Sequence record: PP355766.1
Length of the DNA stretch: 64,000 nucleotides
Reading direction: 5' to 3' (one strand)
Shown here: piece by piece, positions 45,916 through 58,038 of the stretch
How the letters are laid out: every line of letters starts with the position of its first letter
How positions within the stretch are numbered: position 1 is the first letter of the stretch
Program-made: the position numbers and the translations under genes
Notes under the pieces: generated by a model
The model's database searches: none
Told to the model about the DNA's origin: nothing
The model's input: only the letters and a program-made list of their open reading frames with translations

Positions 45916-46078
45916 CTAAGCTATAGTAACACTAAAGTAGTCCATAAGTAAACCAGATTTTTCAACTTTGTTATGACCCACCACTTTGAACTTAGTTCCC
46001 ATCGGTAGCATCCTTTCTTGTTCTTTATCAATCATCTCGATGTCAGCGCTTCTGCGCTGAGCAATGTTATCAATCAAC
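45916..46078 (-). CDS. ModA/ModB-type ADP-ribosyltransferase, C-terminal fragment
   Basis: EQERMLPMGTKFKVV ExE-type motif; upstream of srd as in T4. Confidence 0.6.
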
Positions 46079-46762
46079 ACGGTCATTAAATAACTGAACA
46101 TATTGCCAGTTCTGTCCTTTATCATTTGATACCTTGACCATGTGTTGGAATCTTTCAAACAGATACAAAATTCCGTCTATTTCTCCCAGCATAGTTCTAT
46201 TTTTATCAACACACACTGCTTCAATAGGTCCCTGAATTTCATGATATCCAGATTCACCTACAACGAAGTTTTCAATAGCTGATAAATGAGAATATTCAGG
46301 ACTAAACTGAAAAGACTCAGTCATCAAAGATGCCATCATGGCAGATGTGTTGAAGTTAACATACGACATGTTGTTTAAAGAAAACTTCTGTTTAATGAAT
46401 TCTTTCACTAAACTGAATTCTTGCATGTGCTCAAATGTGTATGCGTTTTCTTCAAAAGTTTGGAACTCTTCTGTTTCAACCCATTCAGACGGCTCAAACC
46501 CTGCTGACGTAGTTTGAACACGCATTTTATAATAAGTAAGCGGTTCAATACGATTTTGTTCGAACCAATCATTATCCGCGGTATAACCCAGTGAAGACCA
46601 ACTCAAGTTATCAGCGGGGATAACTTCCCCCGCTCTGTTTCGAGTTTCGGCCAGTTCTACAAAATAGTAGAAGTTTGCACCAACGTCATCCCAACGAATA
46701 TTGACCTGATTCGCAGATAGCTTATGAATTCGTAAGCTGGTGACGAACGGTGCAATTGTCAT
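46079..46762 (-). CDS. gp7: Baseplate wedge gp7, N-terminal fragment
   Basis: APFVTSLRI.KLSANQV.I.WDDVGANFYYFVE. Confidence 0.92.
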
Positions 46763-47541
46763 TGAGTAATAGGCTCCAATTTAATAGTTGTGTATTGAGG
46801 ACGAAGGTCATTCTCAAATACGATAAGTGTTCCATCGCGGGCGAATATGATATCCTGAGTAGGAGTAGAATAAAGCTCAATACTCTGGTCTTCAAACTGA
46901 AGAGGATCGGCTCCAATAGCTCCAAGGCTCCAGTAAATATTATCACCATAATAATCTACTTCACCGATTTTGTACCAACGAGTTCTTTCTCCATTAGTAG
47001 TTCTATCAAAATCGTCTTCAGTATATGGCTGAATATGAGTATTCTCTTTAATATCACCTGGTTTAAATGGTCCAATGACCATATTTCCTTTACCATTTTT
47101 ATCTGGGTCAGTTCCAACGATATTAACTGGATATGAATCTGCAGTTGGAGTGACAGTAAAGACCAAATCACCAGAACGTAACGTCCGCGGAGTAATAGTA
47201 TTATAGTATTTAATACCTGCGCTAGGAAGAGTGAAATAGTTGACAATTTCACGAACCATCTGAATATCAACAGAAGAACCGATGATTGAATGGTCAGTAT
47301 CATCAATATAGGTCAATAATTTAGATTTACTGAAATTTTTGTTAAACATTTCAACTTCATCAACGTAATATCTATTAATTGAGTCTATAATTTTTGACTG
47401 TAACCACTGCTCAGATTCTTGTAACTTATTCAGCGCATAAGAAGCTTTAATATTATGACGAATGAATAAGTAATCTGGGCTCATTACCGAAGGAGTAATC
47501 GGAGCAAGACAGAAAGGTTTTAGATAATCCTGAATGTCTTC
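46759..47541 (-). CDS. gp6: Baseplate wedge gp6, C-terminal fragment
   Basis: LAPITPSVMSPDY...RDGTLIVFENDLRPQYT. Confidence 0.92.
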   Translation of the reverse strand, partial: EDIQDYLKPFCLAPITPSVMSPDYLFIRHNIKASYALNKLQESEQWLQSKIIDSINRYYVDEVEMFNKNFSKSKLLTYIDDTDHSIIGSSVDIQMVREIVNYFTLPSAGIKYYNTITPRTLRSGDLVFTVTPTADSYPVNIVGTDPDKNGKGNMVIGPFKPGDIKENTHIQPYTEDDFDRTTNGERTRWYKIGEVDYYGDNIYWSLGAIGADPLQFEDQSIELYSTPTQDIIFARDGTLIVFENDLRPQYTTIKLEPITQ

Positions 47542-47549
47542 TCAAATTA

Positions 47550-47626
47550 CTCCGTATAGCTCAGTCTGGTAGAGCGCTCCATTTGGGATGGAGAGGTCGA
47601 ATGTTCGAGTCATTCTATGGAGACCA
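47550..47626 (+). tRNA. tRNA-Pro(TGG)
   Basis: Loop TT-TGG-GA, CCA end. Confidence 0.92.
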
Positions 47627-47632
47627 AATTAA

Positions 47633-47776
47633 CGGTATGACACAATACAAGATGGTGTAAGCTGAGTAGCGGGATTGCAGTCTCGTTCAGATATGCTATC
47701 GAGTATGGGTGATATATTAAACACATGGATTCTGCAAAGTCAATGTGACTCGGTTCGAGGCCGGGCATACCGTCCA
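47633..47776 (+). ncRNA. 144 nt tRNA-like RNA with inserted domain (size and ends like T4 species 1 RNA)
   Basis: CGGTATG/CATACCG + T + CCA; T arm CTCGG-TTCGAGG-CCGGG; multibranched interior. Confidence 0.75.
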
Positions 47777-47801
47777 ATCACTTGCCATTGAGAATTATAT
47801 T

Positions 47802-47954
47802 ATGAAATATTACGGCTTCAAAACATCCCATTTCGGGAAAGCATATCGTACAGAAAACATTGATAGACGTCGAGCATATTACGAATCACTGCATAAAGCA
47901 GGACGTTCTCGTGCACGACAAGAAGGCCAAAAACAAGCGAAGGAAATAGAATGA
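47802..47954 (+). CDS. Small basic hypothetical protein
   Basis: MKYYGFKTSHFG. Confidence 0.55.
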   Translation: MKYYGFKTSHFGKAYRTENIDRRRAYYESLHKAGRSRARQEGQKQAKEIE

Positions 47955-48319
47955 ATATTTTTATTGGTGTATCAAATGACGTAAATGCTATTACGGTGAA
48001 GCTGTCTTTGGATGGACCGGTTAATTTAGCATTAGGGCTTTCATCTTGTGCTAAACGGGATTTAATGATTAACGCTGACTTTGCATATGCATTTGATGAA
48101 CGCAAAGGTATGTGGGTTTGGATTAAATATCGATACGACACATTACTCAAATATGAGTACTTTAGTGAACGTGATATTCAAGAAATTATTGCTTATCACT
48201 CTGGGTGTAAAATTAATAAACTGCGGCAAGTTACTCCGTTAACCGCTGATACTAATGTAGAGCAACTTGTATTAGATTTTAAACAAATTTGCCAGGCGAA
48301 ATATGATGAAAGATTCTAA
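47951..48319 (+). CDS. Hypothetical protein
   Basis: 122 aa, coupled ORF. Confidence 0.65.
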   Translation: MNIFIGVSNDVNAITVKLSLDGPVNLALGLSSCAKRDLMINADFAYAFDERKGMWVWIKYRYDTLLKYEYFSERDIQEIIAYHSGCKINKLRQVTPLTADTNVEQLVLDFKQICQAKYDERF

Positions 48320-54329: not shown

Positions 54330-55560
54330 CAGTTAAATTAAAAGATGCTCCAATAGATACTGACCCTTTAAGCCCGACATTTGGTGAAAAGGTATTTGAA
54401 AAGGAAGTATCTCATATAACAGGCAATCCTAAATCTGTATGCTTTAAAATGGATTCCGTTGGAGGCAAAATCTTTGCCCTTATTACCGGGGAAGTTAAAA
54501 CCTTAGGATTAGACCCAACAGACCCACAGAACGTTGTGGATTCTACAACTAAAGGCGTCTATGTTTACCAAGAAGGCACAAATACTTGGAAGCGCGTATT
54601 TGGTAATACCGATGAAGAAAAACGTCGTATAGAGCATTTATGGACTTCTATGTCAACTGACGGAAAGGAAATATTCTTTTCATCAGCAAATTTTAAGACA
54701 ACAGAGTACGCTCAGGATATTGAGCTTGAGACGAAATATCCAGAACTAATTTCTACCGCAGTTAAAAATGTTAACCCAATTCAGTATCACTCTGATAAGC
54801 ATTATCACATGATGAGTTTCCGAGCGGATGAATTTTCAAGATGGGAAACATTTGTTCCTGGACCGATGAGGTTTTATGCTGAGCCTTGGTTTGTCTGGAT
54901 GGCTCGTGAAGGTAACAGATGCTGGATAAGTACAGCTGACCATGCAGTTGTCATTTATAATGATATTCTTTATCAAAAAAGAGTAGATACAGCAGCACAG
55001 GGAACTACCGAGCGCATTCTTTCGGAAGTGTGGGATAAAGGCGACGCAACGTTTTATTGCCCTCCGGTTTCATTTAACGGATTTTTGCAGTATGCTTCTG
55101 GTATCATGTTTCACGAGCCAGATGGAAAGCTGATAGGTTATTATGCATTCGATTATCGTGTTCGTGACCAGGTAACGCTTAACTGGAAACCAACTGATGT
55201 AATGTTTAAGGCGTTTCTGCAGAACCAAACCCGTGAAGAAGATTGGACTCCTGAACATACTCCAGGCTTGCGTGACCCGGATTTACGTCCGTATCTTACT
55301 AAAATGATGCCGGATAGTTACTTGCTACAAGATAGTAATTTTGAGCACTTTTGTAAGTACTATCTCCAATTCCTTTCGGATGGAAATGGAACACATTACA
55401 ACAGTCTCGTTAATCTTGTTAAGAACAAATATCCTCGCGAAGAAAATGCATGGGAATATCTGTGGTCAGAAGTTTATAAACGCAACATTTATCTGAGTAA
55501 AGACGCTCGTGACGCTGTCGTCCGTTTCTTTGAAGCACGCAAGAATGATTTCTATGCTAC
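54330..55560 (+). CDS. gp7: Baseplate wedge gp7, internal fragment
   Basis: RVFGNT.EE.RRIE, DPDLRPYL, YYLQFLSDG, RDAVVRFFE. Confidence 0.9.
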
Positions 55561-55567
55561 AAGTATA

Positions 55568-55690
55568 GCGTCGTGGAGGTGTCACCTTGCAGGGTGATTA
55601 ACAACCGGAGGACTCCTCAGAACCTTGCCGGCAAGGGCTAACCTTCTCTTCTAACACGACGTCTTAATAGGAGAGCTGCAACTCTTCCTA
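55568..55690. ncRNA. Highly structured RNA with complementary hairpin loops
   Basis: GCGTCGTG/CACGACGT stem, TCACC/GGTGA hairpin with TTGCAG loop, palindrome CCTTGCCGGCAAGG, hairpin with CTGCAA loop. Confidence 0.65.
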
Positions 55691-55694
55691 AAAC

Positions 55695-55868
55695 TTACAT
55701 TACATCATATTCTTCAACTAGATATTCGGAATAAGAGTTATTTGCTTTTAGTTCGTCTTTATACTCTTCAGCTTCATGCTTAGTATGAAAAATTTTCCTA
55801 GGTAAAGAAAACTCGTCATATCCATATTCTAAATTCCAGTTAGTTTCTACTACAACATATACTTTCAT
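55695..55868 (-). CDS. Small acidic hypothetical protein (57 aa)
   Basis: GAGGA SD; MKVYVVVETNW...KIFHTKHEAEEY. Confidence 0.65.
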   Translation of the reverse strand: MKVYVVVETNWNLEYGYDEFSLPRKIFHTKHEAEEYKDELKANNSYSEYLVEEYDVM

Positions 55869-57910: not shown

Positions 57911-58038
57911 TTGTTCAGGCAGGACTCGAACCTGCACGACTGATTCCGTCGGCGATTTACCACCATCGCCAGCATATGATGCAATATGCGAGCTCAAAAG
58001 GTGTCCGTCACCATGTCTACCGATTTCACCACTGAACA
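57911..58038 (-). ncRNA. 128 nt tRNA-like RNA with inserted hairpins; 3' end at contig junction
   Basis: Perfect TGTTCAG/CTGAACA acceptor, Leu/Ser-type D loop (GGTAGA), canonical T arm GCAGG-TTCGAGT-CCTGC. Confidence 0.72.

What the first reader, a model, noticed from the sequence alone, without database searches (positions are those of the whole stretch)
47633..47776. 144 nt tRNA-mimic with Cys-like identity elements
It has a 7-bp acceptor stem, discriminator U and encoded CCA, and a T arm with TTCGA, but a four-hairpin interior replaces the anticodon arm. U73 and a GCA anticodon are the main CysRS identity elements, and both interior loops contain GCA (one reads CT-GCA-AA, a canonical Cys anticodon loop). 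No canonical tRNA-Cys is seen in the window. It may be a chargeable mimic or a T4 species 1 RNA analogue.
Basis: partly seen in the sequence, partly recalled or inferred. Interest (0 to 1): 0.65.

Follow-up and report, generated by a model that had tools for sequence, protein, structure and literature searches.

The report
Phage tRNA-like stable RNA, rnaC family
This 144-base element is the Klebsiella-phage version of phage T4's 50-year-old orphan "species 1" RNA (rnaC): a tRNA-shaped non-coding RNA whose two "GCA" loops are not anticodons but pair with each other, so it is not a cysteine tRNA mimic.

Summary
At 47633-47776(+) there is a 7-bp acceptor stem, a U discriminator, an encoded CCA, a TTCGA T arm, and two interior loops that contain GCA. 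The interior is two arms, not four hairpins.

The element is a diverged homologue (53% identity) of T4 rnaC, also called species 1 RNA. A covariance model built without any Jiaodavirus sequence finds exactly 47633-47776, at 77.7 bits and E 2.5e-17. The family occurs in at least nine Tevenvirinae genera, always inside the tRNA cluster. It is not in Rfam, and it is unannotated or called "hypothetical protein" in this genus.

Across 21 distinct members, 92% of pair cells are paired and 32 of 48 pairs show compensatory change.

The new point concerns the two loops, UUGCAG and CUGCAA. They are perfectly complementary and covary as a pair in four versions (CA/UG, AC/GU, AU/AU, GC/GC). This explains both GCAs. 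GCA itself is not conserved, while U73 is invariant. The cysteine-charging idea is therefore not supported.

The function remains unknown, as it does for T4. Whether the loops pair within one molecule or between copies is open.

Earlier notes of this scan describe tRNA-shaped phage RNAs with kissing hairpins on other DNA. One of them gave the loop lead.

The parts
47550..47626 (+). tRNA-Pro(UGG), the upstream neighbour. It is separated from the element by a 6-nt A/U spacer (47627-47632) and is presumably co-transcribed with it.
   Evidence: ARAGORN; Rfam tRNA 64.3 bits; the same arrangement is in phage Mineola.
47633..47776 (+). The whole rnaC (T4 species 1 RNA) homologue, 144 nt.
   Evidence: Model R2, built without Jiaodavirus sequences, matches 47633-47776 end to end at 77.7 bits, E 2.5e-17. 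Alignments.
47633..47639 (+). Acceptor stem, 5' strand (CGGUAUG). It pairs with 47766-47772.
   Evidence: helix 1: C1-G72 and G7-C66 are invariant, and pairs 3, 5 and 6 covary. The T4 clade has U.U at pairs 4 and 5.
47641..47711 (+). Long segmented arm (P2-P3) that takes the place of the D and anticodon arms. It ends in loop 1.
   Evidence: RNAalifold, helices 2-5, 89-97% paired with 15 of 20 pairs showing a change on both sides.
47675..47680 (+). Loop 1, UUGCAG. It is the kissing partner of loop 2.
   Evidence: helix 6: 100% paired in 21 sequences, with four covarying versions.
47712..47721 (+). A-rich single-stranded linker between the long arm and hairpin P5.
   Evidence: Alignment: conserved AAAAU-type stretch. 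A87 and A89 are invariant.
47722..47747 (+). Hairpin P5, with a 9-10 bp stem, at the place where a long variable arm would sit. It carries loop 2 at 47732-47737.
   Evidence: helix 7: all 10 pairs show changes on both sides. A U-A to C-G change occurs inside the Jiaodavirus lineage.
47732..47737 (+). Loop 2, CUGCAA, the exact reverse complement of loop 1.
47749..47765 (+). T arm: a 5-bp stem and the 7-nt loop UUCGAGG.
   Evidence: helix 8: 100% paired, 2 pairs covary. The UUCGA core is invariant except for one CUCGA (phage TG1).
47766..47772 (+). Acceptor stem, 3' strand (CAUACCG).
   Evidence: helix 1.
47773..47776 (+). Discriminator U, invariant in 21/21, plus the encoded CCA. Position 74 is C only here and in Marfavirus-type members; it is A in most and U in TG1. 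C75 and A76 are invariant.

Best explanation
The element is the Jiaodavirus orthologue of bacteriophage T4 rnaC (species 1 RNA). rnaC is a small stable non-coding RNA carried inside the tRNA gene clusters of T-even-type phages.

Shown here:
- It shares sequence and a covarying secondary structure with T4 rnaC.
- It has a genuine tRNA 'top half': a 7-bp acceptor stem, a T arm, U73 and NCA/CCA.
- The D and anticodon arms are replaced by one long segmented arm and one 10-bp hairpin.
- The two 6-nt loops of these arms, consensus UUGNNG and CNNCAA, are always mutually complementary.

Inferred:
- It is transcribed with the tRNAs.
- Its 5' end is cut by RNase P six bases after tRNA-Pro, and its 3' end is trimmed to the CCA. 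The tRNA-like half thus serves as a processing and stability handle (about 0.8).
- The two loops form a 6-bp kissing helix that locks the body into a closed shape. About 0.6 that this is within one molecule, and about 0.3-0.4 that it is between copies.
- The RNA acts uncharged, as a structured decoy or scaffold for a factor that reads the tRNA acceptor/T-arm surface. This is a guess (about 0.35). The function is experimentally unknown even in T4.

It is not a cysteine tRNA mimic.
For: Identity:
- MAFFT aligns it with T4 rnaC over its full length, at 53% identity.
- Leave-out model R2 hits 47633-47776 at 77.7 bits, E 2.5e-17. The next hit in the window is a tRNA at 12.6 bits.
- Model R1 finds one copy per phage in tRNA clusters of Tequatro-, Karam-, Kagamiyama-, Moon-, Teguna-, Gelderland-, Jiaoda- and Kanagawavirus records and Marfa/F48-type Klebsiella phages. 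blastn also finds it in RB69.

Structure:
- RNAalifold gives 41 pairs, 27 of them compensatory.
- In the pair count, 92.1% of cells are paired against 77.8% in shuffles and about 40% in slid controls. 32 of 48 pairs show a change on both sides. No shuffle out of 500 reaches this.

Kissing helix:
- It is 100% paired in 21 distinct sequences.
- The versions are UUGCAG/CUGCAA (this phage), UUGACG/CGUCAA (T4 and most), UUGAUG/CAUCAA (TG1) and UUGGCG/CGCCAA (Marfa type).

Context:
- A 6-nt spacer follows tRNA-Pro, with no convincing promoter of its own.
- The arrangement is the same in more than 130 Jiaodavirus records.

Expression:
- T4 rnaC is a processed RNA of the tRNA transcript that accumulates late, and its function is unknown (PMC2330249, PMC9697503, PMC3014915, PMC12685909).
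- In one wastewater cDNA run, the contig covering rnaC has about 8-10 times the depth of flanking phage contigs and ends 2 nt after the CCA. This is suggestive only.
Against: - No RNA-level data exist for this phage. All public runs were available only as contigs, which cannot show ends or strand.
- RNase P and CCA processing are inferred from the tRNA-like shape and from my memory of the 1970s-80s T4 literature, which I could not retrieve.
A rough length estimate makes intramolecular closure feasible but tight.
- The decoy/scaffold function has no direct support.
- The invariant U73 is unexplained by a pure 'processing handle' model.
Confidence: 0.8

Rival explanations
1. Self-assembling RNA. 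This would resemble phi29 pRNA and the recently solved manA, ROOL and GOLLD RNAs.
For: - The loops are perfectly complementary and covary. Covariation is blind to whether pairing is intra- or intermolecular.
- In manA RNAs (which occur in cyanophages) and in ROOL and GOLLD RNAs, cryo-EM showed intermolecular kissing-loop interfaces (bioRxiv 10.64898/2026.07.01.735769 and 10.1101/2024.12.08.627333).
- In my rough helix-length estimate, the long arm must fold back about 180 degrees for an intramolecular 6-bp coaxial kiss. That is only just feasible.
- In phages that carry both rnaC and a second kissing-loop RNA, the two RNAs use different loop pairs. This is what one would expect if cross-pairing between molecules mattered.
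Against: - The two hairpins are joined through flexible internal loops and a 10-nt single-stranded linker, which favours the intramolecular contact kinetically.
- No oligomer data exist.
- T4 species 1 RNA was isolated as a discrete band of about 140 nt on denaturing gels, which is uninformative on this point (my memory of the literature).
Confidence: 0.3
2. Chargeable tRNA-Cys mimic. CysRS recognises U73 and a GCA loop and cysteinylates the CCA end.
For: - U73 is invariant in 21/21 members.
- This phage's copy has a perfect 7-bp acceptor stem, an encoded UCCA and two GCA-containing loops.
- The phage has no tRNA-Cys.
- From my knowledge of the literature, U73 is the dominant CysRS determinant, and acceptor minihelices with U73 are weak CysRS substrates.
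Against: - GCA is confined to one lineage and changes in step with the opposite loop.
- The loop is 6 nt on a 10-bp stem, not a 7-nt anticodon loop on 5 bp.
- There is no D arm, hence no G15:G48 or A13:A22. Pair 3:70 is G-C or A-U, not C-G.
- Most members encode ACA or UCA instead of CCA, and they have two U.U mismatches in the acceptor stem.
- ARAGORN and the Rfam tRNA model do not accept it.
Confidence: 0.04
3. Decayed or interrupted tRNA gene (a pseudogene, or a tRNA with an inserted element) with no function of its own.
For: It lies in a tRNA array and keeps only the acceptor and T arms.
Against: - One copy is kept in at least nine genera, with 32 compensatory pairs and 35 invariant positions outside simple tRNA features.
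- T4 rnaC accumulates as an RNA (PMC9697503).
- The insert has no intron-like or mobile-element features (Rfam).
Confidence: 0.02
4. Protein-coding. Many GenBank records place a 'hypothetical protein' over this stretch.
For: ORFs of 55 aa (47610-47777, minus strand, TTG start) and 69 aa (47745-47954, plus strand, GTG start) overlap it. Annotations show 'hypothetical protein' under the match.
Against: - Substitutions across the family preserve base pairs, not codons.
- Indels between genera are not multiples of three.
- The better-curated Mineola record starts the next gene at an ATG equivalent to 47802, after the RNA.
Confidence: 0.01

Closest known systems
Bacteriophage T4 rnaC (species 1 RNA; NC_000866 70908-71046)
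   Same: - Same place: inside the tRNA cluster, downstream of segB.
- Same size: 140 versus 144 nt.
- Same architecture helix for helix.
- Same U discriminator, T loop and complementary loop pair.
- Detected by a family model at E 2.5e-17.
   Different: - Only 53% identical.
- This copy has a fully paired acceptor stem and an encoded CCA. T4 has two U.U mismatches and ACA.
- The loop pair is UUGCAG/CUGCAA instead of UUGACG/CGUCAA.
- It follows tRNA-Pro directly, with no rnaD (species 2) next to it.
Canonical tRNA, in particular E. coli tRNA-Cys and class II tRNAs with a long variable arm
   Same: - Acceptor stem, T arm with UUCGA, discriminator and CCA.
- U73 as in tRNA-Cys.
- Hairpin P5 sits one base before the T stem, where a long variable arm would be.
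   Different: - No D arm and no 5-bp/7-nt anticodon arm.
- No conserved anticodon.
- Rejected by ARAGORN and by Rfam RF00005.
phi29 pRNA and the manA, ROOL and GOLLD RNAs (kissing-loop assemblies)
   Same: - Phage or phage-associated small RNA.
- Two loops whose complementarity is kept by covariation.
   Different: - No sequence or fold similarity, and no Rfam match.
- Those RNAs lack a tRNA-like half.
- Oligomerisation of rnaC is untested.
tRNA-like processing handles: tmRNA tRNA-like domain, MALAT1 mascRNA, MHV68 TMER vtRNAs, plant-virus TLS
   Same: A tRNA top half is used by the tRNA-processing machinery (RNase P, 3' trimming, CCA addition) while the rest of the RNA does something else. 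This is an analogy from general knowledge.
   Different: - Not homologous.
- No G3.U70 and no tag reading frame, so it is not tmRNA.
- It is not at the end of a longer RNA. The tRNA-like stem closes the whole molecule.

Membership tests
T4 rnaC / species 1 RNA family | Lies inside a T-even-type phage tRNA gene cluster, on the tRNA strand, a few bases from a tRNA. | tested here: met
   It starts 6 nt after tRNA-Pro. The native context in Mineola is segB, tRNA-Pro, then the element. T4 and six other genera show the same kind of placement.
T4 rnaC / species 1 RNA family | Significant match of sequence plus structure to a family model that does not contain it. | tested here: met
   R2, built from 14 non-Jiaodavirus members, gives 77.7 bits and E 2.5e-17 with a full-length match at 47633-47776.
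T4 rnaC / species 1 RNA family | Shared secondary structure kept by compensatory changes. | tested here: met
   92.1% of cells paired, 32 of 48 pairs with a change on both sides, 0 of 500 shuffles reaching this. RNAalifold gives 27 of 41 compensatory pairs.
T4 rnaC / species 1 RNA family | Accumulates as a discrete stable RNA of about 140 nt in infected cells. | tested here: inconclusive
   Only contigs of wastewater runs were available. One cDNA-labelled run has a high-depth contig that ends 2 nt after the CCA. This is shown for T4 only (PMC9697503).
tRNA-Cys (or a chargeable Cys mimic) | GCA presented as an anticodon in a 7-nt loop on a 5-bp stem, and conserved. | tested here: not met
   The loop is 6 nt on a 10-bp stem. 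GCA is replaced by GUC, AUC or GCC in other genera, always complementary to the other loop.
tRNA-Cys (or a chargeable Cys mimic) | Discriminator U73. | tested here: met
   U in 21 of 21 distinct members.
tRNA-Cys (or a chargeable Cys mimic) | D arm and core elements (G15:G48, A13:A22) and a cloverleaf accepted by tRNA finders. | tested here: not met
   There is no D arm. ARAGORN makes no call here. Rfam tRNA gives no hit even at E 10.
tRNA-Cys (or a chargeable Cys mimic) | Aminoacylation with cysteine. | not testable with these tools
   This needs a CysRS assay or in-vivo charging analysis.
tmRNA | tRNA-like domain with G3.U70, a tag reading frame, and pseudoknots. | tested here: not met
   ARAGORN finds no tmRNA. 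Pair 3:70 is G-C. There is no Rfam tmRNA hit.
Self-assembling kissing-loop RNAs (pRNA, manA, ROOL, GOLLD) | Loops whose complementarity is conserved by covariation. | tested here: met
   Helix 6; four loop-pair versions.
Self-assembling kissing-loop RNAs (pRNA, manA, ROOL, GOLLD) | Formation of homo-oligomers through those loops. | not testable with these tools
   This needs native gel, SEC-MALS or cryo-EM.

The most novel reading that the evidence does not exclude
The rnaC family is a self-assembling tRNA-headed RNA. That assembly presents several tRNA-like CCA ends and acts as a multivalent trap or scaffold for a host tRNA-binding factor during T-even infection.
Probability: 0.2. Interest if true: 0.75.

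Novelty: new member of a known kind. Interest (0 to 1): 0.42.

Why it matters
rnaC (species 1 RNA) has been known since the early 1970s and still has no function. Reviews and omics papers from 2010 to 2025 say so explicitly.

This work shows that the family reaches Klebsiella Jiaodavirus phages and at least eight other genera. It also shows that the family has no Rfam model and is often mis-annotated as protein.

The invariant features are a tRNA top half with U73 plus a covarying 6-bp loop-loop contact. That gives a concrete structural model and direct experiments: loop swaps, oligomer tests and a charging test.

It also removes a tempting false lead, the GCA 'anticodons'.

For annotation, it argues for an rnaC RNA feature in place of the spurious ORFs in more than 130 Klebsiella phage records.

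Tried and rejected
- Rfam: no family matches at gathering score or at E 10, on the window or on T4 rnaC itself.
- blastn from the window element reaches only Jiaodavirus. T4 was reached only by alignment and covariance models.
- Model R1 found nothing in RB49, RB43, KP15, 44RR2.8t, Acinetobacter phage 133 or JS98. The weak KVP40 hit is a different thing, a tRNA with an insert of about 40 nt.
- Weak R1 hits in other IMG/VR loci (L036, L050 and others) are tRNAs or unrelated.
- IMG/VR and metagenome pattern scans added members but no fifth loop-pair version.
- Old T4 papers could not be read (Miller 2003; Mazzara 1981; Paddock 1976). Statements on RNase P, RNase III and modified bases of species 1 RNA therefore rest on my memory and are marked as such.
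- RNA evidence: all 24 runs are stored as contigs, so no ends, strand or level can be read.
- Co-variation between rnaC loops and the loops of the second tRNA-cluster RNA was tested and rejected. The two RNAs use different pairs in the same phage.
- No protein tools were needed.

Full report
**What is there.** A 7-bp stem, CGGUAUG with CAUACCG, closes the molecule. It is followed by U and CCA. A 5-bp T stem with loop UUCGAGG sits just before the 3' strand. The element starts six bases after tRNA-Pro(UGG) at 47550-47626. ARAGORN and Rfam do not call it, even at E 10. It folds better than shuffles: -48.4 kcal/mol, z = -3.1. The interior is not four hairpins. It is one long segmented arm (47641-47711) ending in loop UUGCAG, an A-rich linker, and a 9-10 bp hairpin (47722-47747) with the 6-nt loop CUGCAA.

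**What phage.** The window is 100% identical to GenBank PP355766.1 (Klebsiella phage vB_Kpn_AM_K4, 288,685 bp). From 47543 onward it matches more than 130 T4-like Jiaodavirus genomes at 97-100%. In those genomes the native order is a tRNA array, segB, tRNA-Pro, this element, then small ORFs (Mineola). The element is unannotated there, or covered by a 'hypothetical protein'.

**Identity.**
- T4's annotated rnaC (species 1 RNA) aligns with the element over its whole length. blastn does not connect the two, and identity is only 53%.
- Homologues fetched from Karamvirus, Kagamiyamavirus, Moonvirus, Tegunavirus, Gelderlandvirus, Kanagawavirus and Marfa/F48-type Klebsiella phages give a clean alignment. 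RB69 (a Mosigvirus, by my knowledge of its taxonomy) carries a 97.8% match to T4 rnaC by blastn.
- A covariance model built only from 14 non-Jiaodavirus members finds exactly 47633-47776, end to end, at 77.7 bits and E 2.5e-17. The next hit in 64 kb is a tRNA at 12.6 bits. Membership in the rnaC family is therefore solid.
- The model found nothing in RB49, RB43, KP15, 44RR2.8t, Acinetobacter phage 133 or JS98. In this sample the family is confined to Tevenvirinae genera of enterobacterial hosts.

**Structure.**
- RNAalifold predicts 41 pairs, 27 of them with compensatory change.
- On 21 distinct sequences my 48-pair structure is 92.1% paired. Shuffles give 77.8% and slid controls about 40%. 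32 pairs show a change on both sides, and no shuffle out of 500 reaches this.
- The acceptor stem covaries. T4 and its nearest relatives tolerate two U.U mismatches at pairs 4 and 5. TG1 and this phage pair fully.
- Invariant in all 21: C1-G72, G7, A8, U73, C75, A76, most of the T arm, two As of the linker, and the outer positions of both loops.

**The two GCAs.**
- A first-reader note of this scan (s1-157293) pointed out that UUGCAG and CUGCAA are complementary. I tested this across the family.
- The loop pair is UUGCAG/CUGCAA here, UUGACG/CGUCAA in T4 and most genera, UUGAUG/CAUCAA in Yersinia phage TG1, and UUGGCG/CGCCAA in Marfa-type phages.
- All six positions pair in all 21 sequences. 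The two central pairs change on both sides in three independent lineages (helix 6).
- Both GCAs are therefore halves of one 6-bp loop-loop helix.
- The 'canonical Cys anticodon loop' is a 6-nt loop on a 10-bp stem. Read in a 7-nt register, the stem breaks.

**Cys mimic reading.** U73 is indeed invariant, which is notable and unexplained. Everything else argues against it.
- GCA is not conserved.
- There is no D arm to supply the core elements.
- Pair 3:70 is G-C or A-U.
- Most members encode ACA or UCA rather than CCA and have a mismatched acceptor stem.

This phage's copy happens to be the most tRNA-like member of the family. I put charging with cysteine at about 4%. It can only be settled at the bench.

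**How it probably works.** What is shown is the homology, the fold, the tRNA-like top half and the loop complementarity. The rest is inference.
- The 6-nt spacer after tRNA-Pro and the absence of a convincing promoter of its own fit co-transcription with the tRNAs. In T4 the tRNAs and species 1 and 2 RNAs come from one primary transcript of about 1.75 kb (PMC2330249).
- The acceptor/T-arm stack is the substrate shape for RNase P, 3' trimming and CCA repair. I read the tRNA half as a processing and stability handle.
- The kissing-locked body would be the functional surface, perhaps a decoy or scaffold for a factor that reads tRNA top halves.
- The function is unknown for T4 too (PMC3014915, PMC9697503, PMC12685909).

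**Intra- or intermolecular.** Covariation cannot tell the two apart.
- Flexible internal loops and a 10-nt linker favour a contact within one molecule.
- My rough length estimate makes that closure tight.
- Cryo-EM of manA, ROOL and GOLLD RNAs showed kissing-loop interfaces between copies.
- I give intramolecular about 0.6 and self-assembly about 0.3-0.4.

**Reads.** All public runs that hold the stretch are stored as contigs, so ends and levels cannot be read.
- Laid on 47400-48000, every run's contigs break at 47543. This confirms that the junction in the window's record is not natural.
- No difference was reported within 47633-47776 in any of the four runs. A-to-T at 47632 (position -1) occurs in two runs.
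- In run X3 a 213-nt contig at depth about 320 covers 47595-47778, while the flanks are at 31-40. It is joined at both ends to the same 29-30 nt, which come from a T5-like phage tRNA-Pro.
- This is what chimeric cDNAs among abundant small RNAs would look like, and it hints at an RNA 3' end at or near the CCA. I cannot exclude a tandem or circular molecule or an artefact.

**Novelty.** This is a new, diverged and unannotated member of a long-known family. The comparative model, and in particular the covarying loop-loop helix, is something I did not find in the searchable literature or in Rfam. Interest is moderate.

Noticed in passing
window 46077-47543 and the junction at 47543: The record behind the window (PP355766.1, 288,685 bp) is scrambled. 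46077-47543 holds baseplate-wedge genes that lie about 11.5 kb away and inverted in other Jiaodavirus genomes. Contigs from four wastewater runs all break at 47543. The tRNA cluster is split over both strands of the window.
   Followed up: partly
window 47595-47778, in run X3: A cyclic k-mer path of 213 nt. It consists of 29 nt of a T5-like phage tRNA-Pro, the 3' 32 nt of this tRNA-Pro, the spacer, the whole rnaC and AT. Its depth is 206-320, against 31-40 for the flanks. It could be chimeric cDNA, a tandem repeat or a circular molecule. This is unresolved.
   Followed up: partly
window 55545-55700 (-): A second structured RNA carries the same loop pair, UUGCAG/CUGCAA. Its homologues lie just downstream of rnaC in Moonvirus KM16 (L005:1729-1858) and are also present in Karamvirus PG7 (L018). 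In those phages rnaC itself uses UUGACG/CGUCAA. The second RNA is absent from true Jiaodavirus genomes, so here it comes from the other phage of the scrambled record.
   Followed up: partly
window 57911-58038 (-): A tRNA-like RNA with an acceptor stem, a class-II-type D arm (GGUGAAAUCGGUAGAC) and a T arm, but a long structured insert in place of the anticodon region. ARAGORN does not call it. It is covered by another note of the scan.
   Followed up: no
L033:1501-1616 (-), Vibrio phage KVP40 179301-179416: A 116-nt tRNA-shaped sequence with acceptor, D and T arms and ACCA, but an insert of about 40 nt in the anticodon region. ARAGORN does not call it. It is unrelated to rnaC beyond the tRNA features.
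   Followed up: partly
window 47610-47777 (-) and 47745-47954 (+): Many Jiaodavirus GenBank records annotate a 'hypothetical protein' over the rnaC homologue. These ORF calls look spurious. The next real gene probably starts at the ATG at 47802.
   Followed up: partly
upstream of window 47622, in run X4: Some natural Jiaodavirus-like strains carry a T5-type tRNA-Pro allele directly upstream of rnaC instead of the one in the window (loose end at 47622). This points to mosaic tRNA genes next to a conserved rnaC.
   Followed up: no
L002:2907-3046 (-), T4 NC_000866 70906-71045: By the comparative structure, the tRNA-like stem of T4 rnaC starts one base inside the annotated 5' end, and the NCA end lies two bases beyond the annotated 3' end (70908-71046). 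The annotation may reflect measured RNA ends. I could not check the original papers.
   Followed up: no
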